This document shows positions 8,876-59,515 of a stretch of DNA of 64,000 bases, piece after piece (the stretch's first letter is position 1; each line of letters opens with the position of its first letter). This DNA comes from Anolis carolinensis. Taxonomy: Eukaryota. Location: positions 2,108,001 through 2,172,000 of the forward strand of contig NW_026943819.1 in assembly GCF_035594765.1 (NCBI RefSeq), in the 5' to 3' direction. The position numbers were made by a program, and so were the translations under genes. A model generated the notes under the pieces. The model made no database searches, was not told where the DNA came from, and worked only from the letters and a program-made list of their open reading frames with translations.

Positions 8876-10013
8876 CTATCTGAGAGTCACGTGGAGGCGG
8901 CGCTGGACCTCTTTTCTCAGCTCAGCCTGCATGTTGGCTGCCTGCTTTTGACTGAGCGCCCGGTCGCAGGACTGGTAAGTGAGCCTGAAGCAGAGGCTGC
9001 TCTGGCCAGAGCCGGGCTGCAGGAAGCGGTCCAGAAGCTGGACAGAGACCACCATGTCATGGGATGCAGCCCTTGCAATGGCATGGAGCTGGACTTCACT
9101 GAATTCACTGGCTTTGGTGACCCAGAAGCTGATGTCATGCACATAGGAGGGCGGGTGGAGTGAGAAGGCTTCAAAGGGCCCCAAACGCCCTCCTGCAAAC
9201 TGCGCCAGGAAACGCTCATCCCACGTCCAGAGAAGGCGCCAGTCAGGGATCCCACATATCCACATAGTGAGAAGATCAAGGTTCAGTGAAACGCACACGA
9301 TTTCTCTATCCGTGTTCATCAACCGGCACGGGACTGTATGAATCACCCCCACGCAAAGCTTCTTCTTTGGAGCCTGGTTCAGAGTCATAGTGATAAAGTA
9401 TTTTGGATTAGGAGTTAAAAAGGCGAGCAATTCCGGCTCATCTGTTGCACAGTCCAACTCGAAACCTGCTTCTTGGAGCAAGGAGTTCAACGTCCTTGTG
9501 AGGTTTTTCACAAGGAGATGCGAAAACGCGTCTTCCGAGTCTTTGTTCGTCAAAATGGCGAAAAGAGCCTCGTGATAAACAGGCAGAGAATAGTCCGAGA
9601 TCGTGCAGTTCCTAAAGGCCAATCCGCTCAAAACCAACAAAGTCCCCAGAGGAAACTCTGCCTCTTCAAACACTTCATGAAGAGAAAGCAGCAGAGAAGG
9701 CCTCAAATAGTATTTCCCCGAGACACAGTCCCTTTCCTGGCCAATTAAATGGCTTCTCTGATCAGTATATTCCCAGCCAGGAAAGGATACGGCTTCGGTT
9801 TCCTTTGGAGTTTTGCTAACCACACCGTCTGGGTTTCCGTTTATTTGAACTTTCCAAAAGGCCTCCAGAGAGGAAGGAGAGCTGGAGCTTCCTTGGAAAA
9901 CCAAGGGAAGGGAAGAGTCTACTCTCTGAACTGGGAATGATTCATTGAGTCCGTCCACAAGCTTTTCAAGTATGGTTCTTATAGGATGTTCTGAATCCCT
10001 GTCTAGAAAGCCC
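8876..10013 (-). CDS. FDXACB1: FDXACB1 last coding exon (PheRS-like region plus ferredoxin-fold anticodon-binding domain, ends ...RLHVTLR*)
   Basis: Long ORF with HDISFW...SLCFRLTYQSCDRALS FDX-ACB signature; CAG acceptor at 10014-10016; spliced CDS 1845 nt. Confidence 0.95.
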
Positions 10014-23508: not shown

Positions 23509-25339
23509 TTGCAACCTCTTGCGATTGGAAGACATAGACCAGAGTGACCCTTCTTTGTATCCTGGTTTCCTCCTGACCACTTTTTATGGTTAGATTACAC
23601 TAGGTAACAAAAAATGGGGGAAAATATTTTGTTCCTGGCTTGAAAGTGTCATTTCCTGTTTAATTGTGCGGCATTTACTTTGAAAGTGGTTTTTTACTCC
23701 AGAAACTTTGTTTTTGTGGCTGCCACAGACTCGATTGTTAAATTGGTTGAGATAGTCATAGAAAAACTATTGCAAAATGTGCTATAGCATGATGTCCCTC
23801 CCGCAGAAACAAAGTTTTTGCAGTTTAATAGACTTTTTTCCATGTCTTTATGCTAGAACCAATAAGGAAATGACCCTGAGAACCCAGGAACAAAAGTTGT
23901 GTCACATCAACATTCTGCGCAGAATTCCCCAGTGTTGCAACAATACCAGCGGATGCAAAGAGGGGCATTGTTTGTTATTATTACCGTATATACTCAAGTA
24001 TAAGCTGACCCGAATATAAGCCGAGGAACCTAATTTTACCACAAAAAAAACTGGGAAAACATTGACTCCAGTATAAGCCGAGAGTGGTAAATTTCAGAAA
24101 TAAAAACAGATACCAATAAAATTACATTAATTGAGGCATTAGTAGGTTAAATGTTTTTTGAATATTTACATCAAGCTCTAATTTAAGATAAGACTGTCCA
24201 CCCCTGATCAAATCATTATTCTCATCTTCTTCAATGTAAATGTGCTTATGTATACTTTTAATAATAATAAAGTAATATATGTAATAATAATAATAAATAC
24301 AGGAAAATAATACATTTAGTAATAAATAGAGTAAAATAATAAATATTATAATAATAATAAGATCAGAGTGAAATAATAAATGTACAGTAGAGTCTCACTT
24401 ATCCAACTCTCGCTTATTCAACGTCCTGGATTATCCAAGCCATTTTTGTAGTCAATGTTTTCAATGCATTGTGATATTTTGGTGCTAAATTCATAAATAC
24501 AGTAAGTACTACATAGCATTACTGTGTGTTGAACTACTACTTCTGTCGAATTTGTTGTATATAGTAGAGTCTCACTTATCCAACATAAATGGGCCGGCAG
24601 AACGTTGGATAATAAGGAGAGATTAAGAAGAAGCCTATTAAACATCAAATTAGGTTATGATTTTACAAATTAAGCACCAAAACATCATGTTATAGAACAA
24701 ATTTGGCAGAAAAAGTAGTTAAGTACACAGTAATGCTACGTAGTAATTATTGTATTTATGAATTTTGCACCAAAATATCACGATGTATTGAAAACATTGA
24801 CTACAAAAATGCATTGGATAATCCAGAACGTTGGATAAGTGAGACTCCACTGTAACATGATGTTTTGGTGCTTAATTTGTAAAATCATAACCTAATTTGA
24901 TGTTTAATAGGCTTTTCCTTAATCCCTCCTTATTATCCAACATATTTGCTTATCCATCGTTCTGCTGGCCCGTTTATGTTGGATAAGTGAGACTCTACTG
25001 TATATACATATCTATATATATAAAAGAGTGATGGCATCACGGCGACCCACAAAACAACAAAACTACAGGCCCCCCAACCCCTCCAGAAACTTCGTTTTTG
25101 TGGCTGCCACAGACTTGAGATATTCATTAAAAAACTATTGCAGGCTGTCCCTCCCGCAGAAACAAAGTTTTTGCAGTTTAATAAACTTTTTTCCCATGTC
25201 TTTATGGCTAGAACCAATAAGGAAATGACCCTGAGAACCCAGGAACAAAAGTTGTGTCACATTAACATTCTGCGCAGAATTCCCCAGTGTTGCAACAATA
25301 CCAGTGGATGCAAAGAGGGCCATTGTTTGTTGTTATTAC

Positions 25340-25561
25340 CTCTGCGAATCTGTTTTCCAGCCAGCCAGCGTTCCTGGGAAACCACGGCCTCCAAAAGAAA
25401 GAGCTAAAGGACCAGGAGGCGGGGAAGAGTTCGGACTCGGCCAGGTGTTCCCCGAACGTCTGGTGGTAGATGCGACTGGGCACGGCGGCAGCGGGGGCGG
25501 CGGGGGCGGCGGAGGAGAGCAGGGGCTTGCGGAAGAAGGGATAGTAAACGGAGATATCCAT
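25340..25561 (-). CDS. CRYAB: Alpha-B crystallin exon 1 ([13 protein letters not shown]...[20 protein letters not shown]...NRFAE)
   Basis: MDI start and FGEHL.ES.LFP motif; donor GAG|GTAATA; TATA box upstream. Confidence 0.93.
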
Positions 25562-44813: not shown

Positions 44814-46491
44814 GAATATATATATATACCCATTAATCTTATAAAAGTATTTCCCCCTGAAATATTTGTTAATCTCTGCTACAGATATATAAGCATTTCC
44901 CCCTGCAAGCCTTTGCAATCCCTATGTACCTTTATATTTCTGCCTATCTATCTATCTACATTAATTTTATATATGAATTTCCCCCTCATATGTTTGCAGG
45001 TCTTTGCAAATCCTATACAGATATAATTATCTATATATAGAGAGAGATGTCTAGATAAATATATATGAATATAGATATATAGGGCTTGTAAAGATTGCAG
45101 GGGAAATCCAAGTGCGCACGCACACACATAGAGATTTCTAGATAGATATAAACATAAATATATAGGGCTTGCAAATATTGCAGGAGGGAATTGCACATAT
45201 ATAGAGAGGGGATTTGCAAACGTTTCAGGGGGAAATGCATATGTGAAATTAGTATATATAACCATAGATCTATATCTAGTTCTGCATTGTTTATGTAGGC
45301 ATTGAATGTTTGCCTGTTACTATGTTGGAAACCTGTCTGCATTTTCCACCTTCGGCTTATACGCGAGTAAATAAGTTTCCCCAGTTTTTTGTGGTGAAAT
45401 TAGGTGCCTCAGCTTATATTAGGATCGGCTTATACTTGCACTAACTTTGCACTACCAGTGCCTACAATGGCCTCAAGGATTGCTAGAGCTCAGGGCTCCG
45501 TCTCCTCCGAGAGGGAGGAATCCCAAGGCGAGAGCGGTGCCTTGAAAAGTGTATCATTTCCTCCTCTTGTGTTTCTGATCTAAATGGCACCAATGGACAC
45601 CCATCCCATGGATGTGGGGCTTTGCTTCCGGGCCCATCTCGCCCTGCGCGGAATCGTCCTCGGGCTTTGACCAGCTAAGCACAAAATCTCACACTGCGGC
45701 AATTGTTATGAGCCGAGACCCAGACGCTCTTTTGTGCCCGCAGACGTGTTATGAAAAGGGGAAATGCAGACTGGCAGCCAAGAATTGGACAAATCAGACA
45801 TGTTTGGGGTGCCGTTCTGTTCTCATAGTCAAGAGAGAGAAGAGAGAGGATGTGTGCATTCTGGAGAGTGAGTACATTTGACTCCACTTTCACTGCCGTG
45901 GCATCAGGAGAGCTGTAGTTTTACAAGATCCTTAGCCTTCTTGGCCTTGGCTAGTGTCCCCAAACTACAAATCCCAGGCAGCTAAAGTGGTGTCTGTTGT
46001 GACTCTGATGGGGATTGTGGGATTCAGGTTCCAGGTGTTCAAGATGATGGGATTCAGATTCAAGATGACTCTGATGGGAATTATGGGATTCAGGATCAGA
46101 GTGTCCCTGCTGTGAGAGATGAGGCAGGGAATGGTGTTGATGATACCGAAGCTAGCCAAGTGCAAAGGGAGGATAACTCTCAGTTAGATAGCATGCAGAC
46201 AGAGGCTGCTGCAAACGAGCTGTCTGGCCTTGACGAAATGACATCTCTGGGTCGAGCTGGCCGTTTGGAATTTCAGGTTCGCAGGAGCGTCAGAATAGCA
46301 AACAAGAAAGAGGTCAGAGGCCAAAGAAATGCATTCATGCTATGCAGAGAATATTAAAGGGTGTGCTGAGAGAGAAACCTTTGTCAAAACCAACGTCTCG
46401 TTTGAAGTAAGAAGTAGCTCTTGCTTTCCTGGATTATCTTGCAGTTTTGTGTATTCAAGTTCATGGGACTTTGTCATGCATTAATGGAACC

Positions 46492-47740
46492 TGATGTGTT
46501 GTGCTCCAGAACTTTGTCAGTCTGGATTCGGAAGTCCCACAGTCTCTTTGCGTGCTCATTTTCCAAGACTTTTGCAGGTTTGTGATCCCAACAGTTCTTT
46601 GCTGCTGGGAGGTGGTACTTGAGGCATAAGTTCCAATCAATCATTTGGGCCACATAGTTGTGCCTCTGTTTGTAGTCTGTCTGTGCAATTTTCTTACAGC
46701 AGCTGAGGATATGGTCCATGGTTTCGTCGGTTTCCTTGCACAGTCTGCATTTTGGGTCATCAGCTGATTTTTCGATCTTGGCCTGAATTGCCTTTGTCCT
46801 GATGTCTTGCTCCTGGGCTGCAAGGATCAGGCCTTCTGTCTCCTTCTTCAGGGTCCCATTCGTGAGCCAGAGCCAGGTCTTCTCCTCATCAGCTTTTCCT
46901 TCAATTTTGTCAAGGAACTTTCCATGCAATGTTTTGTTGTTCCAGCTGTCAGCTCTAGTTTGTAGTGCGGTTTTCTTGTACTGGTTTTTTGTCTGCTGTG
47001 CTTTGACTTCAATCAAAGCAGGTTCTTCACTTTGCTTTACATATTCTGCCAGGGCATGTATTATTATTATTATTATTATTATTATTGACACAACGACGTT
47101 GTATGACACAGCAAACAAGATAGATATGCTAGATTTTGTTTCACAAAACCACAAGTCGAACACTTCCCAAATGTCTAGGACTGTGTGATGTATTTTCGGA
47201 TGATGCGTGCAGATCCCAGCAGGGTGGCCTTTTGCAGTTGGCAGATCATAATTTTGTCAATGTCTATTGTTTCCAAATGCCGGCTGAGATCTTTTGGCAC
47301 GGCACCCAGTGTGCCCATCACCACCAGGACCACCTGCACTGGTTTCTGCCAGAGTCTTTGAAGTTCAATCTGAGTTTTTCCTGTTGTTTTTCGTCAATGC
47401 GACTGTCACCTGGGATGGCAATATCAATTATCCAAACCTTGTTCTTTTCCACAACTGTGATGTCTGGTGTGTTGTGTTCCAGAACTTTGTCAGTCTGGAT
47501 TTGGAAGTCCCACAGTATCTTGGCGTGCTCATTTTCCAAGACTTTTGCAGGTTTGTGATCCCACCAGTTCTTTGCTGCTGGCAGGTGGTGCTTGAGGCAT
47601 AAGTTCCAATGGATCATTTGGGCCACACAGTTGTGCCTCTGTTTGTAGTCTGTCTGTGCAATTTTCTTACAGCAGCTGAGGAGATGATCAATGGTTTCGT
47701 CAGCTTCCTTGCACAGTCTGCATTTTGGGTCATCAGCTGA
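46492..47740 (-). mobile_element. Rearranged R4-clade LINE fragments
   Basis: ORFs with CRLCKETDETMDHILSCC and HNTPDITVVEKNKVWIIDIAIPGD; (TAA)n at the junctions. Confidence 0.85.
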
Positions 47741-48334
47741 TTTATAATAATAATAATAATAATAATAATTATATCACCTAGATTATCAAGGCAAATAACC
47801 CACAATATCTGCTTTGAACTGGGTTATCTGAGTCCACACTCCGTGGATTTAATACAGCTGTATGGAAAGGGCTTGAGGAAGGATGCCACAGCCCTAGGGA
47901 AGGGGAGAGGTGTCAAACCGCATTAAGCCGGCAGTGTGGATGGGCTGCCTTTCAGTTCCCTTCGGAGGTGACCCAAATGGAAAGAAAGCGGGAGGAAGAG
48001 GAGGAGGAGGAGGAGGAGGAAGAGCGTCTCCTCCTTGCAAGGCACGCCTCCCTCCCTCCCTCCCTCCCTCCCTCGGAGCTGGCTTTGCGGTTGCCTTCCT
48101 TTCGCAAGGAAAGGGAAGGTGTGTGTTGTTTTCACCGCGACAAATCCGTATTTGTTGCCCAGGTGAGAGGGGGCCCTTCCCTCCCTGCTGGCCAGGGGCA
48201 GGGTGCCCTCCCCCTCCCCCTCCCCCTTGCCTGGAATTGAGAGAGAGAAAGAAGGAGAGAAAGAAAGAGAAAGGAAGAAAGAAAGAAAGAAAGAAGGGAA
48301 GAAACCAGGAAATGCGGCTTCTGCCGGAGAGGCG

Positions 48335-48372
48335 ATGGGCAACCAGTGCGGAGGCGCCTGTGCTGGGAAAGG
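48335..48372 (+). CDS. C11orf52: C11orf52 exon 1 (MGNQCGGACAGKG)
   Basis: MGN...C start like human MGNRVCCGG; donor GG|GTGAGT; GC-rich upstream region. Confidence 0.8.
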
Positions 48373-48736
48373 GTGAGTTTGGGTCTTATTAGGGGAGGAT
48401 CAAGGGGGGGTCTCATGCCCAGACCCCTTGGAGGACCCATGGCAGCTCATTTAGTGCCTCCACCCCATGCCAAGGGGGAGAAGGACCCTTCAAACTCCCT
48501 CAATCCCTCTACTAGGGAGATACTTGTTGGCCACCTTGCAGGAAGGAGAAGCCTCCTTATTCCCTATAGTTTGGAGGAGGGGTCCTCGAACTGTTGGGGG
48601 GCCGGACTAGGATGAAATAGTGAAAAATCAGGATTGTTGTTGTTGTGTGCCTTCAAGTTGTTGTGTGCCTTCAACCCCAAGTCTAAAGTTTATGGCAGAG
48701 GCCAGGTCAATGAGCCTTAGTTTGGGGACCCCTGAT

Positions 48737-49565
48737 CTAGACAATGTCACAAGACCATAGGTAAGCAAAGAGACCTTCAAAAACCATCTAGACAATCTCA
48801 TAAAACCATAGGTAAGGAAAGAGACCTCCAAAAACCATCTAGATGGTCTCATAAGACCATAGGTAAGCAAAGAGACCTCCAAAGGCTATCTAGATGGTCT
48901 CATAAAACCATAGGTAAGCAAAGAGACCTCCAAAGGCCATCTAGATGGTCTCATAAGACCATAGGTAAGCAAAGAGACCTCCAAAGGCCATCTAGATGGT
49001 CTCACAAGGCCATAGGTAAGCAAAGAGACCTCCAAAGACCATCTAGATGGTCTCACAAGACCATAGGTAAGCAAAGAGACCTCCAAAGGCTATCTAGATG
49101 GTCTCATAAAACCATAGGTAAGCAAAGAGACCTCCAAAGGCTATCTAGATGGTCTCATAAGACCATAGGTAAGCAAAGAGACCTCCAAAGGCTATCTAGA
49201 TGGTCTCACAAGACCATAGGTGAGCAAAGAGACCTCCAAAGGCTATCTAGATGGTCTCATAAGACCATAGGTAAGCAAAGAGACCTCCAAAGGCTATCTA
49301 GATGGTCTCACAAGACCATAGGTAAGCAAAGAGACCTCCAAAGGCCATCTAGACGATCTCATAAGACCATAGGTGAGCAAAGAGACCCTCAAAGGCCATC
49401 TATATGTTCTCATAAGACCATAGGTAAGCAAAGAGACCTCCAAAGGCTATCTAGATGGTCTCACAAGGCCATAGGTAAGTAAAGAGACCCTCAAAGGCCA
49501 TCTAGATAATCTCATAAGGCCATCAGAAGACCATAGATAAGGAAAGGGACCCTCAAAGGCCATCT
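48737..49565. repeat. 51-bp minisatellite, ~16 copies
   Basis: CTAGATGGTCTCATAAGACCATAGGTAAGCAAAGAGACCTCCAAAGGCCAT, period 51. Confidence 0.95.
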
Positions 49566-49761
49566 TTGAATGCCATGTCTCCATGAGATGGTCTTGGGAG
49601 TTGCAGTTTCCCAAGATCCAACCCCTTCTCTGGGCATGTTTGCACTAGAGAATAAATGCAGTTGGGACACATTTTAAATGCCATTATTATTTTTATTATT
49701 GTTGTTATTGTTATTATTATTAATAGTAGTAGTAGTATGCCATGTCTCCATGCTACGCAGT

Positions 49762-50100
49762 CCTGGGAGTTATAGTTTCCCAAGGTGCATACCCTTCTCT
49801 TGAATGCGTTTACACTATGAAATGAATGCTCTTGGACTCCACTTTAAATACCATAGGTCCATACTATACATTCCTGGGAGTTATAGTTTCCCAAGGTGCA
49901 TACCCTTCTCTTGAATGCGTTTACACTATGAAATGAATGCTCTTGGACTCCACTTTAAATACCATCGGTCCATACTATACATTCCTGGGAGTTATAGTTT
50001 CCCAAGGTCCATACCCTTCTCTTGAATGCGTTTACACTATGAAATGAATGCTTTTGGACTCCACTTTAAATATGTGTTCCTGGGAATTATAGTTTCCCAA
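49762..50100. repeat. 110-bp tandem repeat, ~3 copies
   Basis: CCTGGGAGTTATAGTTTCCCAAGG recurs at 110-bp spacing. Confidence 0.85.
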
Positions 50101-50345
50101 GGCCCATCATACCCTTCTCTGGGTCCATTTGCACTAGAGAATAAATACAGTAAGGACCCATTTTAAATGCCATTATTATTATTATTATTATTGTGACAAT
50201 GAAATATGATGTATACATTCAGTTTTATCATATTTATTTATTGTGTTGTTACAAGTGTTTTGTCTAGTTTTTGTATAGAATGTAATCAGGTCTTTTCAAG
50301 CCTGTTTGTTTGGCTTGGTACTTTGATATGGCCTTCCTCTTGTTG

Positions 50346-50382
<37 letters not shown>

Positions 50383-50955
50383 ACCATTCCTCCATGCTGT
50401 GCAGTCCTTGGAGCCATAGTTTCCCAAGGTCCATATCTTTGGACATGGCACGACCATGGCACTTAAAGCAGGGCTCAATCTGCATCCATTGTGCCGTGTA
50501 GATGCCCGCTTGGTCTCCTTTGGAGGGTCAGTTTGCAAAGGGAGCGGCCGGACCCTTGGCTGGGCTTCCCTTGTTCTAATTTGAGCGAATCCACCTGAGT
50601 TTGGATGGACGTTGCCAACCATCTATCTTCTCAGCCCGGGGATTAGTTTGCAGCCGGGCTCAGAATAACTCCTGTTGCGGGGAAAGGCACGGCCAGGCAA
50701 GACAAGGGGAGAGGAAACCGATACGGGGCCCGTTCTTCTCTCCCAAAACAGGGCCGGGTGGGGATGCCAGCCAGGATATTTAGAGACAATCTATTTTAAT
50801 GGCATGGCCACGGCTTGGCAGGACAGGAGGTGCGGAGGGACCCTTTGTGCTCCTCTCTTGGCCCCTTTGGATTAAGGGGTGGGCTGTGTGTGTGCTTCTA
50901 CACTGGAGAATTAAAGCACTTTGATACCACTGTAACCAAAACTCAGCCAGAACTA

Positions 50956-51010
<55 letters not shown>

Positions 51011-51249
51011 TCCAACATGTGATCCAATACAACAGCCAGCAGAGTGTCTACTGTGCACTCATCTTAAATATTGAAAAACATTTAATCTACTGGTGCCTCA
51101 ATTAATGCAATTTTATTGGTATCTATTTTTATTTCTGAAATTTACCACTCTTGGCTTATACTGGAGTCAATGTTTTCCCAGTTTTTTGTGTGGTAAAATT
51201 AGGTGCCTCGGCTTATATTCAGGTCGGCTTATACTCGAGTATATACGGT

Positions 51250-51317
51250 AATCATATGTGTCTATATGGATCCAATATCTATCTATCTGCCTGGTGATCG
51301 ATCGATCTATCTATCTA

Positions 51318-51348
<31 letters not shown>

Positions 51349-51445
51349 GCTACCTAGCTATCATATGGGTCTATATGGATTATCATCTATCTATCAATCA
51401 TATAGGTCTATATGGATCCAATATCTATCTATCTGCCTGGTGATA

Positions 51446-51497
<52 letters not shown>

Positions 51498-51974
51498 ATC
51501 TATCTACTTGTCTGTCAGTCTGTCTGTCTGCTACCTAGCTATCATATGGGTCTATATGGATTATCATCTATCTATCAATCATATGGGTCTATATATGGAT
51601 CCTCTATCTGTCTGTTTATATATCTGTTTGTTGATCTATCTATCTGTCTGTCTATCTATCATATGGGTCTAACTCTATATGGATCTAATATCTACCTATC
51701 ATATAGATCTATGTGGATCATCTGTCTGTCTATCTATCTGTTTGTTGATCTGTCTATCTATCTATAGTATCTATCATATGGGTCTATATATGGATCCTCT
51801 ATCTGTCTATCTATCTGTTTGTTGTTCTGTCTATCTATAGTATCTATCGTATGGGTCTATATATGGATCCTCTATCTGTCTATCTATCTGTTTGTTGTTC
51901 TGTCTATCTATCTATAGTATCTATCATATGGGTCTATATATGGATCCTCTATCTGTCTATCTGTCTGTTTGTTG

Positions 51975-52016
<42 letters not shown>

Positions 52017-52088
52017 AGTATCTATCATATGGGTCTAACTCTATATAGATCTAATATATATATATATCATTTGGGTCTGTGTGGATCC

Positions 52089-52155
<67 letters not shown>

Positions 52156-52705
52156 CTCTATCATATGGATCTATATATGGGTCCTCTATCTATCTGTTTG
52201 TTGTTCTGTCTATCTATCTATAGTATCTATCATATGGGTCTATATATGGATCCTCTATCTGTCTATCTGTCTGTTCGTTGATCTATCTATCTATCTATAT
52301 CTATCTATCTATCTATAGTATCTATCATATGGGTCTAACTCTATATAGATCTAATATATATATATCATTTGGGTCTGTGTGGATCCTCTATCTATCTATC
52401 TATCATATGGATCTATATATGGGTCCTCTATCTATCTGTTTGTTGATCTGTCTATCTATCTATAGTATCTATCATATGGGTCTATATATGGATCCTCTAT
52501 CTGTCTATCTGTCTGTTCGTTGATCTATCTATCTATCTATCTATCTATAGTAGCTATCATATGGGTCTAACTCTATATAGATCTAATATCTATATATCAT
52601 TTGGGTCTGTATGGATCCTCTATCTATCTATCTGTCTATCTATCTACTTAGCTGTCGTATGGGTCTGTATGCATCAAATATCTTTCTATCTATCTGTCTA
52701 TCTAT
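51250..52705. repeat. Composite (ATCT)n/(GTCT)n satellite with higher-order repeats
   Basis: Direct inspection. Confidence 0.9.
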
Positions 52706-54161
52706 TAAACCGCCGAGCTGCTGAACTTACTGACTGAAAGGTCAGCAGTTCGAATCCCAGGAGCACGGCGAGCTCCTGCTGTTAGCCCCAGCTTCTGCCA
52801 ACTTAGCAGTCCGAAAACATGCAAATGTGAGTAGATCAATAGGTACTGCTCCGGCGGGAAAGTAATGGTGCTCCATGCAGTCATGCCAGTGGCCACATAA
52901 CCTGGGAGGTGTCTACGGACAATGCCGGCTCTTCGGCTTAGAAATGGAGATGAGCACCAACCCCCAGAGTTGGACACGACTGGACTTAAGGAATAAGGAA
53001 ATTGTCATTTAACGTGTGTTTACACTGTAGAAGGAATGCAGTTTGTGACTTTGCCTGGACTGCCATGGCTCAATGCAATGGGATCCTGAGAGTTCTGGGG
53101 GGAATTAAACACCAGGGCAGTGACAAACCAAGGTTTCAGAGCAAGAACAAAGTCTCTTTTAGGAAAAATCCTTTAGCCGGGAGAGGAAAATATCCCCCCA
53201 AATGAGGACAAATTGTACTCAGTGGATACGGGCAGCGGACCAAGTTTTGGAACGGAAAAACCGGGTAGGAGGAAGACATAAAACGGAACGGGTGGAAATA
53301 CAAACAGGAGGACCTCGGATCATAACATTTCGCCGCACGTCCCGCTTATAAATATTGTTTGGAAAGTAGTCGTCACAACGTTAATAAAACCCAGCACGAT
53401 GTTGTCGTTTGAACATTAGGATTCGAATTCCTGCTCAACCCATGGGACGAGTCACACTCTCTCAGCCTTCAAGGGATGTGTGATTTCAGCTCTGCTATAA
53501 CTGCAGGTTCGGGGCCTGTGTGCCAAGTTTTCAAATTATTATTATTATTCTTATTATTTGCAACATTTATATCCCTCCCTTCTCACCGCAAAGGGGTCTC
53601 AGTGCGGTTTACAAGTACAGTAGAATCTCACTTATCCAACACTCGCTTATCCAACGTTCTGGATTATCCAACGCATTTTTGTAGTCAATGTTTTCAATAC
53701 ATCGTGATATTTTGGTGCTAAATTCATAAATACAGTAATTAGCATTACTGCGTATTGAACTACTTTTTCTGTCAAATTTGTTGTATAACATGATGTTTTG
53801 GTGCTTAGTTTGTAAAATCATAAACTAATTTGATGTTTTAGGCTTTTCCTTAATGCCTCCTTATTATCCAACCTATTCGCTTATCCAACATTCTGCCGGC
53901 CCGTTTATGTTGGATAAATGAGACTCTACTGTATATATACATACAATATATTATATTATACAATTATATTGCAATATTATTAGTAAAATTGCATGTAATA
54001 TAAATATACAATTATAATAGTGAATTATAATTATTATTACATTGTACTACATCATAATATTATTATTAATATTACATGTATATACAATATATTATAATAT
54101 TAGTATAGTATAATATTATTATATATTATTACTGTATATCATTAAATTGATACAGAAGACA

Positions 54162-54740
54162 TGTTGAAAAGATGATGGAAAGGACCAAATGAGACACAGT
54201 CAGTTGAAGGCAAAACCAGAGGTTTATTCTCAATGGCTGGAGAGGATGTCAGCAGAGACGGCACTCTAAAAACTCGCATAGCACAATTGCGAATATATAG
54301 TATATTTATTACATTTTGACAGCTATTGAAGCCTACAGTGCTTCCTTTTGATTGGCTCAGAAAGTGTCCAGCTAGGTTCCGCTCCCTGATTTGTCCTAAG
54401 CCGATGCTGATTGGTCTTTAAAGGGGAAACTGTAATAAACTGTCATTGGACTATTTAGAAGATATATCAATTTTCAATCCACCCATGCGGAGGGCTCGAT
54501 TGGGACAGAATGCAATGGAGCAAGCGATAATGGGCTTAATATTCTAGTCTTGGGTGATACAAGGTGTCAGTCCAGATAAACAATGGGTGCAAGAGGTGTT
54601 GTCCGTCTCAATGGGTGTCACAATTGTGGGTCTGGTTTGGGGGCATGGAAGAGAAAGCATTCCCAGATATATCAGATGAAACAGTTAAGAGGACCCAGGG
54701 GTTCTGATGCAGGTTCATTGTATGTCTCCCTTCTCGTCCA
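54162..54740 (-). mobile_element. Possible solo LTR
   Basis: Minus strand shows several CCAAT boxes, a TATA-like tract and AATAAA ~60 nt before a terminal CA; far boundary and TSD not identified. Confidence 0.35.
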
Positions 54741-55364
54741 TTGTGACAGTTTTATGGTAATTTGGGGAATCACTTGTTGAAGTCTGAGATGGGGTGAAGA
54801 GCGGTATATAAATTAATTAATTAAATAAATAAATCTTGAAATGTTATTATAGGGAAAAATGGAAAAAGGCAATGTGGGTGAGTGACATTGTTGTACCTCA
54901 GCAAGCAGCTGAGGATTTTTCTGACATTTCAAAGAACGAGGGATTTGATGGGCTTCAAAGTGTAATGAGGATTTTGATGGGTTTCAAAGTGAAGAGTCTG
55001 TCAGTGTTAGGAGAGAATTGCAGCCAAACGAGGCCAAAGTTTTGGATTCCTGTACTCAGGCAACTGGGGAAAGTTAAAGTCCCAGGTCTCTTGAGAAACG
55101 GCCTTCGGCTGATGGGGAGTTTTCCCGAGAAACCGAATTAGGCTTGAGAACAGAGGGAGTGAAAAATAGACTAATTAGAAGCTCTGAGAGAATCTGTGAT
55201 AATACCTTATAGCCTAGGTGCGTTCGGCATGATCATGGCACCAATCTTGCCATGATAGGCTTGCCTTGGGGTCACCATAAGTTGGAAATGGAAAGTCAGA
55301 GTACGTTCAGAGGAGTCGGGTCTTCCGAATGTGATGCATCTCTTTCTCCCGTCTTTTTCTTTAG

Positions 55365-55405
55365 GAGCTGTCCTTCGCCGTTCAAGAGAAAGAAAGAAAA
55401 ACCAG
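55365..55405 (+). CDS. C11orf52: C11orf52 exon 2 (SCPSPFKRKKEKP)
   Basis: Similar to human SCPSTFQKKKK; strong acceptor and GTGAGT donor; phase 2 to 1. Confidence 0.85.
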
Positions 55406-56355
55406 GTGAGTTTTTGGTTGTCAGTGGGAATCTTTCTCCGGGAGCTTTGTGATATTTCTGGGTTGAGTTCTCCATCCAGTGGGACCACCTTCGGGCTGCA
55501 TCTGCACTGTAGAATTAACACAGTTTGGAACCACTTGAACTGCTACAGTTAAGTGTTATGGAATCCTGGATGTTGTAGGTTGGTGAGGCACCAGGACTCG
55601 TTGACAGAGGAGGCTATGGTGTAGATCAGGCGTGGTTGAACTTGAGGCCTCCAGGTGTTTTGGATTGCAACTCCCACCATTCCTAACAGCCTCAGGCCCC
55701 TTCCTTTTCCCCCTCCGCCGCTTAAGCGGCGGAGGGGGAAAAGGAAAGGGCCTGAGGCTGTTAGGAATGGTGGGAGTTGCAATCCAAAACATCTGGAGGT
55801 CTCAGGTTCAACCATGTCTGGTGTAGATGCATCTGAGAGATCCTAAACAGGAGCAATAAACATGAAATCTACTTGACTTAGTCTTTGCAAAACATGTTCT
55901 GGGACGAAATACCCAACCTTGTAGATAAATAAACAGAATGTTCCAAAGTTGTTATTTTTCCTGTTTTTCCTAAGGAGACCTCTGTCCTTGCTTTCCTTCT
56001 GCAGGGTGTTTCCATGGACAACGTGGTTTTGTGTGCCTCGAACCAGCGCCCTTGTGGCAAGGGATTTGGGTATTATCAAGGGAGGGAAGGAGTCATGCGC
56101 TAAACATTGACAAAAAGGTTAAACATTGACAAAAAGGTCACAACAGGTTTCTGTTTCCAATGCAAGATCTCAGAGCAGAGAGTTAAAAAAAAGCACATGC
56201 TTGCATGTATAATGTAGACCGAATGCAGTACTTTGGCTGCCTCTACTCAATGGAGTCGTGGGAGTTGTAGTTTGGAGAGGTTAAAGACCTTGTAAAACTA
56301 TGCTCTACTGTGTCCCTTGTTATTTCCCAAATTATATCAACCGTTTCTTTTCCAG

Positions 56356-56402
56356 GATCCAGAATCGACAAGAAGAGTATTCAGCGCCCAGAGAGCAAAA
56401 AG
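56356..56402 (+). CDS. C11orf52: C11orf52 exon 3 (GSRIDKKSIQRPESKK)
   Basis: Pyrimidine tract/CAG acceptor and GTAAAT donor; restores phase 1 to 0. Confidence 0.7.
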
Positions 56403-58037
56403 GTAAATTCTTTCCCAAGAGATGTAATAATGCCAGTTGCAAAACCATAGTAGACCTGTAGTACGAATTTGAGTTGCATTATATGTCAGTGTAGAGCCAA
56501 CCTATGTTTAGGTCTATTTTAGTATTTATATATTATAGGCTTTCAATTATAATTTCTATCGTTTTCAGTGACATAAGCCACTTTGAATTTTGCTGTGGTG
56601 ATGGTGGTGGTGATGGTGATGACGATAATGATGGTGGTGGTGATGACGATGGTGGTGACGATGGTGGTNNNNNNNNNNNNNNNNNNNNNNNNNNNNNNNN
56701 NNNNNNNNNNNNNNNNNNNNNNNNNNNNNNNNNNNNNNNNNNNNNNNNNNNNNNNNNNNNNNNNNNNNNNNNNNNNNNNNNNNNNNNNNNNNNNNNNNNN
56801 NNNNNNNNNNNNNNNNNNNNNNNNNNNNNNNNNNNNNNNNNNNNNNNNNNNNNNNNNNNNNNNNNNNNNNNNNNNNNNNNNNNNNNNNNNNNNNNNNNNN
56901 NNNNNNNNNNNNNNNNNNNNNNNNNNNNNNNNNNNNNNNNNNNNNNNNNNNNNNNNNNNNNNNNNNNNNNNNNNNNNNNNNNNNNNNNNNNNNNNNNNNN
57001 NNNNNNNNNNNNNNNNNNNNNNNNNNNNNNNNNNNNNNNNNNNNNNNNNNNNNNNNNNNNNNNNNNNNNNNNNNNNNNNNNNNNNNNNNNNNNNNNNNNN
57101 NNNNNNNNNNNNNNNNNNNNNNNNNNNNNNNNNNNNNNNNNNNNNNNNNNNNNNNNNNNNNNNNNNNNNNNNNNNNNNNNNNNNNNNNNNNNNNNNNNNN
57201 NNNNNNNNNNNNNNNNNNNNNNNNNNNNNNNNNNNNNNNNNNNNNNNNNNNNNNNNNNNNNNNNNNNNNNNNNNNNNNNNNNNNNNNNNNNNNNNNNNNN
57301 NNNNNNNNNNNNNNNNNNNNNNNNNNNNNNNNNNNNNNNNNNNNNNNNNNNNNATGTTGTGGAATTTCATTTGGACGCGGGTGAAGAAAGCAGACTGACA
57401 GCAGAAGTTGTCTTCAAGATAGGGTTGTTGTATGTCTTTTGGGCTGTGTGGCCATGTTCCAGAAGTATTCTGGAAAGAATACTTCTGGAACATGGCCACA
57501 CAGCCCGAAAGACATACAACAACCCTGTGATCCCGGCCATGAAAGCCTTCGACAACACATTGTCTTCAAGATAGTTTACTTTTGGCCAAGAGCAGGTGAC
57601 AATGTTAGCTAATGCCCAAAAAACGCAATGCCACACCTTAAATTGGCTTTCCAATTTATAAAATTTTACAGAAGCATGCGCAGAAAGCTAACTGACAATG
57701 GAATTTGCTGACTATTATAATCCTTTTGGACATGCGTAGTTGCCTTGTAACTTATATAACTCATTACTCATCACATCAGGTGACGTGTCCATAGTTTGCT
57801 CCACGTATGCACTATCCTCAGGTGACATGTTCATAGTTCATCCCACGTATGCATCATCCAGCAGCCACATCATTACTGCAGTTTGCATGAGCTTATATTG
57901 TGAGCAAAGAGCAAATGTCAGGCAGAACATGTCCTGTCAACACTTTCATGGAAAAACAAGATTTTTGAGTAAGGGTCATCTAGGTAAGGGATTTTTAGGG
58001 TCTTTAAATAAAATATTAAAGAGCTGCTCCATTATTT

Positions 58038-59220
58038 ATGGTGATGACGATGATGGTGATGGTGAGATGACAATGGTGNNNNNNNNNNNNNNNNNNNNNN
58101 NNNNNNNNNNNNNNNNNNNNNNNNNNNNNNNNNNNNNNNNNNNNNNNNNNNNNNNNNNNNNNNNNNNNNNNNNNNNNNNNNNNNNNNNNNNNNNNNNNNN
58201 NNNNNNNNNNATGATGATGGTGGAGATGACAATGGTGATAGTGTTGACAATGGTGATGATAGTGATGATGATGATGGTGACGATGATAATGACGCTAGTG
58301 ATGATGATAGTGATGGTGGGGATGATGATGGTGATGGTGATGACCATGGTGATGTCAGTGATGATGATGGTGGAGATGACAATGGTGATAGTGTTGACAA
58401 TGGTGATGACAGTGATGATGATGATGGTGATGATGGTGATGACGATAATGATGCTACTGATGATGATGGTGATGGTGATGACCATGGAGATGACAATGGT
58501 GATAGTGTTGACAATGGTGATGATAGTGATGATGATGATGGTGATGATGGTGACGATGATAATAACGCTAGTGATGATGATAGTGATGGCGGGGATGATG
58601 ATGGTGATGGTGATGACCATGGTGATGACCATGGTGATGTCAGTGATGATGATGGTGGAGATGACAATGGTGATAGTGTTGACAATGCTGATGACAGTGA
58701 TGATGATGATGGCGACGATGGCGACGATGATAATGACACTAATGATGATGATAGTGATGGTGGGGATGATGATGGTGATGGTGATGACCATGGTGAAGAC
58801 CATGGTGATGTCAGTGATGATGATGGTGGAGATGACAATGGTGATAGTGTTGACAATGGTGATGATAGTGATGATGATGATGGTGACGATGATAATGATG
58901 CTAGTGATGATGATAGTGATGGTGGGGATGATGATGGTGATGGTGATGACCATGGTGATGACCCTGGTGATGTCAGTGATGATGATGGTGGAGATGACAA
59001 TGGTGATAGTGTTGACAATGGTGATGATAGTGATGATGATGATGGTGACGATGATAATGACGCTAGTGATGATGATAGTGATGGTGGGGATGATGATGGT
59101 GATGGTGATGACCATGGTGATGTCAGTGATGATGATGGTGGAGATGACAATGGTGATGATGTTGACGATGATAATGACGATGGTGATGATAATGACGATG
59201 GTGATGATGGTGGTGATGAT
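58038..59220. repeat. (GAT/GGT)n low-complexity satellite with higher-order repeats; similar tract at 56595-56668; adjacent to N gaps
   Basis: Direct inspection. Confidence 0.9.
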
Positions 59221-59263
59221 AAGACCTGCCGTGACATTACATCTTCTCATTTCCCATCTCCAG

Positions 59264-59515
59264 GGCCTTGAGGTGGCTCCGGTTTACGACGAGGTCTCCG
59301 AGTTCCCGGTCTACGCTAGTGTGAGCAAGCCCAAGCCCTCCAAGCGCGAGGACAGCAGCGTCCACTATGCGGACATCCAGGTTTTCAGCAAAGTCCGGGA
59401 ACGTTCGGCCGGCGAGGTGAAAGGCCTGCAGAGCCAGGCCGCCACCGAGTACGCCACTCTCAACTTCCCTCGCGTCGCCCCGAAATACGACAGCAAGAAC
59501 GGGACGCTGGTGTAG
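59264..59515 (+). CDS. C11orf52: C11orf52 last exon (GLEVAPVYDEV...HYADIQV...TEYATLNFP...YDSKNGTLV*)
   Basis: HYADIQV, TEYATL.FP and YDSKNGTLV match human C11orf52; CAG acceptor at 59261-59263. Confidence 0.93.
   Translation, partial: GLEVAPVYDEVSEFPVYASVSKPKPSKREDSSVHYADIQVFSKVRERSAGEVKGLQSQAATEYATLNFPRVAPKYDSKNGTLV

What the first reader, a model, noticed from the sequence alone, without database searches (positions are those of the whole stretch)
48335..59515. C11orf52 looks like a receptor-less, lipid-anchored ITIM+ITSM phosphatase adaptor with a PD-1-like switch motif
Seen: the spliced 125-aa protein starts MGNQCGGAC (Gly2 plus nearby Cys) followed by a polybasic KRKKEK patch, has no hydrophobic transmembrane stretch, and carries VYDEV, VYASV, VHYADI (59360-59377), TEYATL (59444-59461) and a terminal -GTLV. 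Known: Gly2/Cys/basic is the Src-family-type membrane anchor; V-x-Y-x-x-I is a canonical ITIM; TEYATL differs by one residue from the PD-1 ITSM TEYATI; -T-x-V is a class I PDZ ligand. The two motif tyrosines are 28 residues apart, similar to tandem SH2-engaging pairs. As I recall the human protein, these motifs are the parts retained while the linker is not. Inference: this poorly characterised gene encodes a membrane-tethered SHP-1/SHP-2 recruiter coupled to PDZ scaffolds, an inhibitory-receptor tail without the receptor.
Basis: partly seen in the sequence, partly recalled or inferred. Interest (0 to 1): 0.8.

Follow-up and report, generated by a model that had tools for sequence, protein, structure and literature searches.

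The report
Lizard C11orf52: lipid-anchored ITIM/ITSM-like adaptor
This is the green anole copy of the uncharacterised gene C11orf52. It encodes a small, unfolded, lipid-anchored protein whose paired tyrosine docking motifs and PDZ-binding tail have been kept since the ancestor of jawed vertebrates, so a phosphatase-recruiting adaptor role is plausible and testable but still unproven.

Summary
A four-exon, 125-aa gene on the + strand (48335-59515) is letter-for-letter the annotated Anolis carolinensis "C11orf52 homolog" (Pfam DUF4578). Both assembly gaps lie in intron 3 and do not touch the reading frame.

- **Motifs as described:** MGNQCGGAC plus KRKKEK, no hydrophobic segment, VHYADI (59360-59377), TEYATL (59444-59461), and a -GTLV end.
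- **Conservation:** it is motif-restricted and reaches well beyond amniotes. From skate to mammals, every member read has [V/I/L]xY[A/S]x[I/V/L], then T-x-Y-A-x-[I/L] 26-32 residues later (28 in 115 of 120 amniote-dominated hits).
- **Anchor and tail:** Gly2 is kept, and -GTLV is lost only in teleosts.
- **Structure:** AlphaFold finds no fold.
- **Published support:** phosphoproteomics reports human pY78 and pY103. The human tail peptide binds Scribble PDZ3 at 26.5 µM.

TEYATL is not a strict ITSM, because it has L at +3. SH2 or phosphatase binding is untested, and "inhibitory" is an assumption. No transmembrane relative exists, so "receptor tail" is an analogy, not ancestry.

I found no paper in the held library that proposes this role. 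Published ITIM screens filter for transmembrane proteins and would miss it.

Verdict: a real, annotated gene, and a credible new member of the membrane-anchored phosphotyrosine adaptor class.

The parts
48335..48372 (+). Coding exon 1: start codon, MGNQCGGACAGK plus two bases of a split Gly codon. Carries Gly2 (predicted N-myristoylation site) and Cys5 and Cys9 (candidate palmitoylation sites).
   Evidence: Sequence and GTGAGT donor. Exact match to residues 1-12 of P0176. The PROSITE-type pattern G-{EDRKHPFYW}-x2-[STAGCN]-{P} is met, and in 51 of 57 MG-start orthologues.
55365..55405 (+). Coding exon 2: (G)SCPSPFKRKKEKP(G). Contains Cys15 and the basic patch KRKKEK (55384-55401).
   Evidence: AG acceptor and GTGAGT donor. 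Exact match to residues 14-26 of P0176. C15, P16, S17, R21 and K25 are at least 90% conserved in 52 amniote proteins.
56356..56402 (+). Coding exon 3: basic, poorly conserved linker SRIDKKSIQRPESKK.
   Evidence: AG acceptor and GTAAAT donor. Exact match to residues 28-42 of P0176. Linker columns 26-47 have a mean entropy of 1.91 bits.
56669..58210 (.). Stretch of intron 3 that holds the two assembly gaps (56669-57353 and 58079-58210), embedded in a GAT/GGT minisatellite. Not coding. The gaps were not filled or looked up.
   Evidence: The CDS is continuous across E3/E4 in the identical database protein. Orthologues show no extra residues at K42|G43.
59264..59515 (+). Coding exon 4: 83 residues plus TAG. 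Carries all five tyrosines and the C-terminal tail. Matches Pfam DUF4578.
   Evidence: Translation. PF15147 at E = 3.7e-26 on this exon alone. Exact match to residues 43-125 of P0176.
59282..59296 (+). Y1 motif VYDEV (Y50), a Y-[D/E]-x-V type.
   Evidence: Y50 and V53 are at least 90% conserved both in amniotes and across 25 bony-vertebrate sequences. A Y[DE]xV-type motif is present in 97 of 120 hits.
59309..59323 (+). Y2 motif VYASV (Y59), preceded by the conserved Pro57.
   Evidence: P57 is invariant in 25 bony-vertebrate sequences. A PxYAxV-type motif is present in 85 of 120 hits, and the tyrosine is lost in mammals.
59360..59377 (+). ITIM-type motif VHYADI (Y77), continuing as QV.
   Evidence: Fits S/I/V/LxYxxI/V/L (consensus as given in PMC11085718). 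[VIL]HYA[DN]I is present in 120 of 120 hits, with only I, V or L at -2. H76, Y77, A78, I80 and Q81 are invariant in 52 amniotes. Y77 is invariant in 25 bony vertebrates and the motif is present in skate.
59444..59470 (+). ITSM-like motif TEYATL (Y105; 59444-59461) with its conserved extension NFP.
   Evidence: TEYAT is present in 120 of 120 hits; +3 is L in 114, I in 5 and H in 1. T103, E104, Y105, A106, T107 and F110 are invariant in amniotes. T103, Y105 and A106 are invariant in 25 bony vertebrates. PD-1 has QTEYATIVFPS and IRS-1 has STYASINF (PMC7078208).
59486..59512 (+). C-terminal block YDSKNGTLV: Y117 plus a class I PDZ-ligand end, -T-L-V-COOH.
   Evidence: Y117, D118, N121, G122, T123, L124 and V125 are invariant in 52 amniotes. 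GTLV is the end in 120 of 120 hits. It is kept in skate, coelacanth, lungfish, amphibians, bichir and gar, and lost in teleosts. The human peptide RYDSKNGTLV binds Scribble PDZ3 with Kd 26.5 µM (PMC3189207).
59676..59681 (+). AATAAA, a candidate polyadenylation signal 161 nt after the stop codon.
   Evidence: Read only. Usage was not tested.

Best explanation
The locus is the green anole orthologue of C11orf52 (Pfam DUF4578). It encodes a 125-residue, intrinsically disordered protein.

My best reading is a membrane-anchored phosphotyrosine docking adaptor, with four inferred steps:
1. **Anchoring.** The N-terminus is myristoylated on Gly2. In amniotes it is also palmitoylated on nearby Cys. 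The adjacent basic patch helps hold the protein on the inner leaflet of the plasma membrane.
2. **Phosphorylation.** Membrane tyrosine kinases, probably of the Src family, phosphorylate Y77 and Y105.
3. **Recruitment.** The resulting pair, [V/I/L]-x-pY-A-x-I...(28 residues)...T-E-pY-A-T-[L/I]-x-F, engages the two SH2 domains of one SHP2 (or SHP-1) molecule. This recruits the phosphatase and opens it.
4. **Placement.** The invariant -GTLV end ties the complex to PDZ scaffolds such as Scribble at epithelial junctions.

The upstream tyrosines Y50 and Y59 may dock Src-family kinases or Csk in non-mammals.

Shown: the gene model, its identity, the motifs, their conservation and spacing, the disorder, and (in human and mouse, from the literature) tyrosine phosphorylation and PDZ binding in vitro. 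Inferred: lipidation, the kinase, the SH2 partner and the cellular output. That output need not be inhibitory.
For: **Identity**
- Exons match P0176 exactly.
- PF15147 scores 110 bits against a cutoff of 27.
- Synteny with an FDX-ACB-domain ORF (probably FDXACB1) and CRYAB exon 1.

**Anchor**
- The myristoylation pattern is met in the anole, in 51 of 57 MG-start amniote-dominated hits and in 12 of 13 MG-start non-amniote members.
- There are 2-5 Cys in the first 20 residues of 55 of 57.
- No transmembrane segment.

**Disorder**
- pTM 0.15 and essentially no secondary structure.

**Motif selection**
- The 20 invariant columns in 52 amniotes fall only in M1-G2, the ITIM, the ITSM-like motif and the C-terminus.
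- Entropy is 0.08-0.30 bits in the motifs against 1.7-1.9 bits in the linkers.
- Position -2 of Y77 is only I, V or L, and position -2 of Y105 is always T. SHP-type SH2 domains read -2, which most SH2 domains and AP-2 do not (established knowledge).
- Spacing is 28 in 115 of 120 hits and 26-32 from skate to teleosts.

**Match to validated SHP2 ligands**
- PD-1 TEYATIVFP and IRS-1 TYASINF.
- PZR VVYADI.

**Published experimental data**
- Human pY78 and pY103 in lung tissue (PMC2777383).
- A mouse pY site (PMC4303118).
- pY regulated during H. pylori infection (PMC4102909).
- PDZ binding of the human tail peptide.
- Epithelial co-expression (PMC4062414).
- Presence in urinary vesicles (PMC10296596).

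**Sub-threshold leads**
- The only Pfam families hit by more than one member, apart from DUF4578, are LST1, HGAL and SIT.
- The nearest protein-language-model neighbours are GCSAML, GCSAM and TRAT1/SIT.
Against: - No binding, lipidation or localisation data exist for the lizard protein, and none on SH2 partners for any orthologue in the papers I could read.
- TEYATL fails the strict ITSM consensus.
- In one pull-down study the isolated PZR VVpYADI peptide, the closest match to the ITIM here, did not retrieve SHP2 (PMC11085718).
- A SHP2 proximity-labelling study does not list C11orf52 in its supplements, although I did not check whether the cells used express it.
- The one affinity-purification study, known to me only through citation, pointed to Wnt signalling and desmoglein 1, not phosphatases.
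- All four YxxΦ motifs also fit AP-2 sorting signals.
- The similarity to LST1, HGAL and SIT is below every curated threshold.
Confidence: 0.55

Rival explanations
1. It is a Csk/Src-family regulatory scaffold of the PAG/Cbp type. The lipid-anchored protein would dock a Src-family kinase on pY50 (YD/ExV) and Csk on pY59 (YA[S/T/V]V). The PDZ tail would link it to the cortical scaffold, as described for PAG and EBP50. SHP2 would be secondary or irrelevant.
For: - Y50, V53 and P57 are at least 90% conserved or invariant across bony vertebrates.
- The block Y-[D/E]-x-V-x5-Y-A-x-V is kept from skate to birds.
- The architecture (lipid anchor, several tyrosines, PDZ ligand) parallels PAG/Cbp (established knowledge; Csk-scaffold review PMC3492796 listed, not read).
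- SIT is a weak Pfam neighbour.
Against: - Y59 is lost in all mammals read, and Y50 is lost in equids and rhinoceros.
- Y77 and Y105 are never lost.
- This reading does not explain the invariance at -2 and +5 of Y77 and Y105.
Confidence: 0.15
2. The tyrosine motifs act mainly unphosphorylated, as YxxΦ sorting signals. They would bind clathrin adaptor μ subunits and route a lipid-anchored cargo or adaptor into endosomes and extracellular vesicles.
For: - YDEV, YASV, YADI and YATL all fit YxxΦ.
- The human protein is repeatedly found in urinary vesicles.
Against: - Both tyrosines are found phosphorylated in tissue.
- YxxΦ recognition does not need the invariant T-E at -2 and -1, the aliphatic -2, A at +1, or hydrophobic +5 residues.
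- It does not need a fixed spacing of about 28 residues.
Confidence: 0.1
3. The conserved C-terminal 50 residues form a composite binding region for a different partner, for example a junctional or Wnt-pathway protein such as desmoglein 1. The region would fold on binding. The resemblance to ITIM and ITSM would be incidental, and tyrosine phosphorylation only modulatory.
For: - Conservation extends beyond the textbook motif positions: H76, Q81, V82, R89-S90-A91, and the whole of YDSKNGTLV.
- pLDDT rises to about 85 over the last 15 residues, with a small hairpin.
- An affinity-purification study is cited for Wnt signalling and DSG1.
Against: - There is no fold (pTM 0.15).
- In fish and frogs the inter-motif sequence diverges freely while the two motifs and their spacing stay.
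- Teleosts drop the C-terminal block but keep both motifs.
Confidence: 0.15

Closest known systems
PD-1 (PDCD1) cytoplasmic tail
   Same: - An N-terminal ITIM followed by T-E-Y-A-T-[I/L]-x-F-P. The anole has ATEYATLNFP and PD-1 has QTEYATIVFP.
- The tyrosines are 28 residues apart, against 25 in PD-1.
- Both lie in a disordered region.
   Different: - C11orf52 has no ectodomain or transmembrane helix.
- The ITIM differs (VHYADI against VDYGEL).
- L stands in place of I at +3 in most amniotes.
- Expression is epithelial rather than lymphoid.
- There is no detectable homology: the profile search found no receptor relative.
PZR/MPZL1 and IRS-1 SHP2-docking sites
   Same: - V-x-Y-A-D-I is identical to the PZR C-terminal ITIM core VVYADI.
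- Residues +1 to +5 of the Xenopus orthologue (ASINF) equal those of IRS-1 pY1222, half of the classic bisphosphoryl activator of SHP2.
   Different: - These are short-motif matches only.
- PZR is an Ig-type transmembrane receptor and IRS-1 is a large PH/PTB docking protein.
- The isolated PZR C-ITIM phosphopeptide did not pull down SHP2 in the study read.
LST1/A and SIT (small transmembrane adaptors that recruit SHP-1/SHP-2)
   Same: - Both are about 100-200 residues, membrane-proximal and palmitoylated, with disordered tails carrying ITIMs that bind SHP phosphatases (PMC8111073; PMC2193021).
- Fish members give weak Pfam hits to LST1 (E = 0.0034) and SIT (E = 0.078).
   Different: - LST1 and SIT are transmembrane, disulfide-linked dimers expressed in leukocytes.
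- The Pfam hits are below the gathering thresholds.
- For SIT, SHP2 binding did not explain its inhibitory effect.
HGAL/GCSAM and GCSAML (lipid-anchored lymphoid adaptors)
   Same: - No transmembrane helix, and membrane attachment by N-terminal lipidation (established knowledge).
- A disordered body with tyrosine motifs.
- They are the nearest protein-language-model neighbours (score 0.88, 191 of 256 shared features).
- Weak Pfam HGAL hits from the coelacanth and bichir members.
   Different: - HGAL uses an ITAM-like pair and a Grb2 site and is activating (established knowledge).
- C11orf52 has an ITIM-type pair with a spacing of about 28 residues.
- The similarity scores are below significance.
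PAG/Cbp and FRS2
   Same: - Lipid-modified membrane docking proteins with several phosphotyrosine sites.
- PAG also ends in a PDZ ligand.
- FRS2 is myristoylated and recruits SHP2 (established knowledge).
   Different: - Both are much larger.
- PAG has a transmembrane helix and recruits Csk.
- FRS2 has a PTB domain.
- There is no sequence relationship.

Membership tests
C11orf52 / DUF4578 (PF15147) | Match to the Pfam model above its gathering score | tested here: met
   110.4 bits against a cutoff of 27 for the full protein. 92.7 bits for exon 4 alone.
C11orf52 / DUF4578 (PF15147) | Orthology: identity to the annotated protein, and conserved gene neighbourhood | tested here: met
   All four exons match XP_008119278/XP_062816878 exactly. 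An FDX-ACB domain ORF lies at 8876-9958(-) and CRYAB exon 1 at 25262-25561(-) upstream. The human gene order it is compared with is from memory.
ITIM-bearing recruiters of SHP-1/SHP-2 | Sequence S/I/V/L-x-Y-x-x-I/V/L in a cytosolic, accessible region | tested here: met
   VHYADI is present, and the motif is kept in 120 of 120 hits and in every non-amniote member read. The region is disordered in the model, with 10-residue block pLDDT means of about 70-72.
ITIM-bearing recruiters of SHP-1/SHP-2 | The motif tyrosine is phosphorylated in cells | not testable with these tools
   There are no lizard data. Human pY78 and pY103 are reported in lung tissue (PMC2777383). Y103 is assigned from the fixed 20 residues that follow it. 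Assigning Y78 to the ITIM is an inference from position.
ITIM-bearing recruiters of SHP-1/SHP-2 | Phosphorylation-dependent binding of SHP-1, SHP-2 or SHIP | not testable with these tools
   No report was found.
ITIM-bearing recruiters of SHP-1/SHP-2 | Transmembrane receptor or transmembrane adaptor context, as required by published ITIM catalogues | tested here: not met
   The highest Kyte-Doolittle 19-residue window is 0.52. The catalogue pipeline in PMC11460946 filters for a predicted transmembrane domain.
ITSM (immunoreceptor tyrosine-based switch motif) | Strict consensus T-x-Y-x-x-V/I | tested here: not met
   The anole has TEYATL. Only 5 of 120 amniote-dominated hits have I at +3. TEYATI or TEYASI is present in skate, gar, most frogs and teleosts read, and marsupials. 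The extended consensus (V|L|I|S|T)xYxx(I|L|V) of PMC11460946 is met.
ITSM (immunoreceptor tyrosine-based switch motif) | Binding of SAP/EAT-2, giving the switch behaviour | not testable with these tools
   No data.
N-myristoylated, palmitoylated Src-family-type membrane anchors | Met-Gly start with a permissive N-myristoyltransferase context, nearby Cys and/or a basic cluster | tested here: met
   MGNQCGG fits G-{EDRKHPFYW}-x2-[STAGCN]-{P}. Cys5, Cys9 and Cys15 are present, and residues 18-42 hold 11 K+R against 3 D+E. G2 is invariant in amniotes. Actual lipidation was not tested.
Class I PDZ ligands | C-terminal [S/T]-x-Φ-COOH, with measured PDZ binding | tested here: met
   The protein ends in -T-L-V. 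The last nine residues are identical to the human peptide, which bound Scribble PDZ3 at 26.5 µM and did not bind PDZ1 or PDZ2. PDZ3 bound 38 of the 56 peptides tested, so specificity is low.
ITAM | YxxL/I, then 6-8 residues, then YxxL/I | tested here: not met
   Y50/Y59 has V at +3 and only 5 residues between the motifs. Y77/Y105 are 28 residues apart.
LST1 (PF05083), HGAL (PF15666), SIT (PF15330) | Match to the Pfam model above its gathering score | tested here: not met
   The best scores are 18.0 bits (LST1, cutoff 22.3) and 15.7 bits (HGAL, cutoff 27). SIT reaches E = 0.078. Each family is hit by only 2 of 25 members.

The most novel reading that the evidence does not exclude
C11orf52 is the epithelial, receptor-independent counterpart of inhibitory-receptor tails. 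It would be a lipid-anchored ITIM-ITSM module, as old as jawed vertebrates, that is phosphorylated by membrane Src-family kinases and loads and activates SHP2 at PDZ/Scribble polarity complexes. It may also share ancestry with the small lymphoid adaptors HGAL/GCSAML, LST1 and SIT, which would define one old superfamily of membrane-anchored phosphotyrosine adaptors.
Probability: 0.2. Interest if true: 0.75.

Novelty: new member of a known kind. Interest (0 to 1): 0.55.

Why it matters
C11orf52 is an understudied gene with no accepted function, yet its two tyrosines rank among the sites that differ most between normal lung and lung tumours.

The analysis gives a concrete, cheap-to-test mechanism with clear mutants: G2A, Cys-to-Ser, Y77F/Y105F and deletion of TLV. 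It also shows that the relevant residues, and the spacing between them, have been kept from skate to mammals.

If confirmed, it would add a lipid-anchored, non-receptor member to the set of proteins that position SHP2, which is a drug target. It would also expose a blind spot in ITIM catalogues, which consider only transmembrane proteins.

Tried and rejected
**Steps that led nowhere**
- **RNA reads across E2-E4.** Splicing evidence therefore rests on the identical database protein and on transcript-size contigs from another squamate.
- **Sequencing runs.** The look-up of sequencing runs listed 20 runs that hold exon 4, none on record as RNA. This gives no expression claim for the anole.
- **Encoding contigs.** The look-up of encoding contigs for P0176 returned only one genome record, with the same gene span as the window (L001). 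I did not read it, so no gap letters were looked up.
- **Literature.** No paper in the held library links C11orf52 to SH2, SHP2/PTPN11, ITIM/ITSM or myristoylation. The 2021 J Proteome Res affinity-purification paper is not held. The supplements of a SHP2 proximity-labelling study lack the gene.

**Readings rejected**
- **ITAM.** The spacing and residues do not fit.
- **Homology to a receptor tail.** There are only 60 hits in 1.84 billion representatives, none a recognisable transmembrane receptor, plus one marginal 2138-aa hit at E = 6e-4.
- **Membership in LST1, HGAL or SIT.** All scores are sub-threshold.
- **The 591-aa ORF 57740-59515.** It is an artefact of the stop-free minisatellite frame running into exon 4.

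The exons were searched by reference, and the identical database protein P0176 stood in for the whole protein.
- No human contig or human protein was fetched.

Full report
**1. What is in the sequence**

On the + strand there is a clean four-exon gene.
- Exon 1 (48335-48372) starts at ATG and reads MGNQCGGACAGK plus two bases.
- Exon 2 (55365-55405) reads SCPSPFKRKKEKP.
- Exon 3 (56356-56402) reads SRIDKKSIQRPESKK.
- Exon 4 (59264-59515) gives 83 residues and TAG.
- All introns are GT-AG. The first three exons total 126 nt, so exon 4 is entered in phase 0 and the product is 125 aa.

Each exon was handled by reference. The whole-codon translation of every exon matches one database protein exactly, at residues 1, 14, 28 and 43, and the split codons GG|G and G|GA give that protein's G13 and G27. 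The protein is the Anolis carolinensis "uncharacterized protein C11orf52 homolog" (XP_008119278/XP_062816878, here P0176). It served as the stand-in for the full-length product.

**2. The assembly gaps**

Both N runs (56669-57353 and 58079-58210) lie in intron 3, inside a GAT/GGT-type minisatellite. They do not touch the coding sequence.
- The E3/E4 join (K42|G43) is the same in the database protein.
- No squamate orthologue has extra residues there.
- Two transcript-size contigs from a skink-like squamate carry an uninterrupted 128-aa CDS.

A genome record with the same gene span as the window (L001) was returned by a tool, and I left it unread.

There is therefore no direct RNA evidence for the anole itself. 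Twenty public runs hold exon 4, but none is on record as RNA.

**3. Identity and neighbourhood**

Exon 4 alone hits Pfam DUF4578 (PF15147) at E = 3.7e-26, and the whole protein scores 110 bits against a cutoff of 27. Upstream lie an FDX-ACB-domain ORF (8876-9958, -), probably FDXACB1, and CRYAB exon 1 (25262-25561, -). This resembles the human 11q23 gene order as I recall it.

**4. The motifs and chance**

- The start fits the PROSITE-type N-myristoylation pattern.
- Cys5, Cys9 and Cys15 follow, and residues 18-42 hold 11 K+R against 3 D+E.
- The most hydrophobic 19-residue window scores 0.52, so there is no transmembrane helix.
- In composition-preserving shuffles, an ITIM plus T-x-Y-x-x-[VIL] pair 15-40 residues apart occurs in 0.087% of cases. 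With a class I PDZ end as well, it occurs in 0.0015%.
- Using the permutation test of a published ITIM screen, at least two motifs arise in 1.4% of shuffles.

These tests are post hoc. The stronger argument is conservation.

**5. Conservation**

A search with exon 4 found 142 proteins, all C11orf52 homologues of squamates, tuatara, birds, crocodilians, turtles and mammals.
- In 52 full-length amniote proteins the invariant columns are M1, G2; H76, Y77, A78, I80, Q81; T103, E104, Y105, A106, T107, F110; and Y117, D118, N121, G122, T123, L124, V125.
- Mean column entropy is 0.30, 0.20 and 0.08 bits in the ITIM, the ITSM-like motif and the C-terminal block. In the linkers it is 1.7-1.9 bits.
- Over the 120 listed hits, [V/I/L]HYA[D/N]I, TEYAT and a terminal GTLV are present in all 120.
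- The residue at -2 of Y77 is only I (55), V (34) or L (31). The residue at +3 of Y105 is L (114), I (5) or H (1). The spacing is 28 in 115 of 120.
- The two anole species differ at 8 residues. None lies in a tyrosine motif or in the tail.

**6. Reach beyond amniotes**

A profile of the amniote alignment was scored against 1.84 billion representative proteins and found only 60 hits. The named ones include coelacanth, lungfish, frogs, axolotl, bichir, reedfish, gar, teleosts and a skate.
- Every member I read has [V/I/L]-x-Y-[A/S]-x-[I/V/L].
- T-x-Y-A-x-[I/L] follows 26-32 residues later, and exactly 28 in the skate.
- Across 25 bony-vertebrate sequences the invariant columns are M1, P57, Y77, T103, Y105 and A106. 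G2, Y50, V53, A78 and E104 are at least 90% conserved.
- Skate, gar, most frogs and teleosts read, and marsupials carry the strict TEYAT/SI form.
- Outside amniotes the N-terminal Cys are mostly absent, while Gly2, the myristoylation pattern (12 of 13) and 6-12 basic residues in the first 40 remain.

This suggests an ancestral myristoyl-plus-basic anchor, to which amniotes added palmitoylatable Cys. Teleosts replace the GTLV end.

**7. Structure**

AlphaFold2 on the 52-sequence alignment gives pTM 0.15, mean pLDDT 61 and essentially no secondary structure. The protein is best read as a disordered string of short linear motifs. The 10-residue pLDDT block means over the two motifs are about 70-72, below the cutoff of 80 used for functional ITIMs in PMC11460946.

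**8. How it most likely works**

The conserved positions are the ones that SHP-family SH2 domains read: an aliphatic residue or Thr at -2, Ala at +1, I/L at +3 and a hydrophobic residue at +5. This specificity rests on established knowledge, not on a test here.

The motifs match validated SHP2 ligands.
- PD-1 has QTE(pY)ATIVFPS, against ATEYATLNFP in the anole.
- IRS-1 has ST(pY)ASINF, against TEYASINF in Xenopus.
- The PZR C-terminal ITIM is VVYADI.

An N-terminal ITIM followed about 25-30 residues later by a T-x-Y motif is also the layout of the PD-1 tail.

Published phosphoproteomics supports use of the sites.
- Human pY103 and pY78 rank 4th and 16th among the sites that differ most between normal lung and tumour (PMC2777383).
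- Y103 is assigned securely, because 20 invariant residues follow it in a 123-aa protein. Assigning Y78 to the ITIM is my inference from position.
- A mouse pY site marks PyMT mammary tumours.
- The phosphorylation falls during H. pylori infection.

The human tail peptide RYDSKNGTLV, which shares its last nine residues with the anole, bound Scribble PDZ3 at 26.5 µM and did not bind PDZ1 or PDZ2. PDZ3 bound 38 of the 56 peptides tested, so this shows competence rather than specificity.

The human gene is co-expressed with epithelial genes, and the protein is found in urinary vesicles. This fits an epithelial, membrane-bound protein.

My model is that a lipid anchor holds the protein at the membrane, a kinase phosphorylates Y77 and Y105, the pair engages the tandem SH2 domains of SHP2 or SHP-1, and the PDZ ligand places the complex. 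I give this about 55%. Only the sequence features, their conservation, the phosphorylation and the in vitro PDZ binding are shown.

The sign of the output is open. SHP2 docking proteins are often positive regulators. For SIT, SHP2 binding did not explain inhibition.

**9. What does not fit, or is left over**

- TEYATL is not a strict ITSM. It fits only the extended consensus.
- The isolated PZR VVpYADI peptide did not retrieve SHP2 in one study.
- Y50 (Y-D/E-x-V) and Y59 (P-V-Y-A-x-V) form a second conserved block, with P57 invariant even in mammals that have lost Y59. They resemble Src-family and Csk SH2 sites, which supports a PAG/Cbp-like rival or an added function.
- The invariant YDSKNG stretch ahead of TLV is longer than a PDZ ligand needs.
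- All four tyrosines also fit YxxΦ sorting signals.

**10. Comparison with known systems**

By function it most resembles small membrane-anchored phosphotyrosine adaptors: the transmembrane LST1/A and SIT, which recruit SHP-1/SHP-2, and the lipid-anchored HGAL/GCSAM.
- Computed leads agree with this. The only Pfam families hit by more than one member, apart from DUF4578, are LST1, HGAL and SIT.
- The nearest protein-language-model neighbours are GCSAML, GCSAM and TRAT1/SIT.
- All of these are below threshold, so membership is not claimed.
- There is no transmembrane relative, so "receptor tail without the receptor" is an analogy.

**11. Novelty**

The gene and family are annotated, and the phosphosites and the PDZ measurement are published. 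I found no paper in the held library that proposes an ITIM/ITSM or SHP-recruiting role. The one functional study is not held.

A recent genome-wide ITIM/ITSM screen required a predicted transmembrane domain, so this protein was excluded by design.

I rate it a new member of a known kind. It is a well-supported, directly testable functional hypothesis for an orphan gene, not a new mechanism.

Noticed in passing
window 57740-59515 (minisatellite roughly 56590-59225): A GAT/GGT codon-like minisatellite fills intron 3 on both sides of the two N gaps. It has no stops in the frame of exon 4, which produces a spurious 591-aa ORF that runs into the real exon.
   Followed up: partly
window 48747-49523: A 51-bp minisatellite with 15.2 copies at 92% match, in intron 1 just downstream of exon 1.
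   Followed up: no
window 51297-52646: An array of about 1.35 kb, rich in ATCT, with higher-order 77-bp and 242-bp periods, in intron 1.
   Followed up: no
window 55622-55825 and 57421-57526: Two near-perfect palindromes in introns 2 and 3. One has 102-nt arms with no spacer (92% complementary). The other has 51-nt arms with a 4-nt spacer (98% complementary). They look like back-to-back copies of short interspersed elements.
   Followed up: no
window 48312-48314: An out-of-frame upstream ATG lies 23 nt before the start codon, just after a purine-rich GA/GAAA microsatellite (about 48240-48300). It could form a short upstream ORF if the transcript starts further upstream.
   Followed up: no
window 8876-9958 (-) and 25262-25561 (-): An FDX-ACB domain ORF (probably FDXACB1, E = 1.5e-14) and CRYAB exon 1 (Pfam Crystallin, E = 1.7e-14) lie upstream of the gene. 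HSPB2, which as I recall lies between CRYAB and C11orf52 in human, did not show up in the ten ORFs I scanned between them, but I did not search for it properly.
   Followed up: partly
window 46474-47163 (-): A 229-aa ORF about 1.2 kb upstream of exon 1 has a weak match to the zinc-binding region of reverse transcriptases (zf-RVT, E = 5.8e-4). It is probably a retroelement remnant.
   Followed up: no
protein P0141 (from the profile search): A 257-aa mammalian protein appears to join a small heat-shock protein (HSPB2-like) body to the C11orf52 C-terminal exon, which would make it a read-through type fusion. I judged this by eye only and did not check the domain.
   Followed up: no
proteins P0154 and P0172 (bichir, reedfish); P0155, P0159, P0167, P0168 (teleosts or teleost-like): The bichir and reedfish members have a proline- and basic-rich repeat insert of about 230 residues between the ITSM-like motif and GTLV. 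The teleost members lose GTLV and instead share a conserved ADI[F/L]IPPG block after the ITSM.
   Followed up: no
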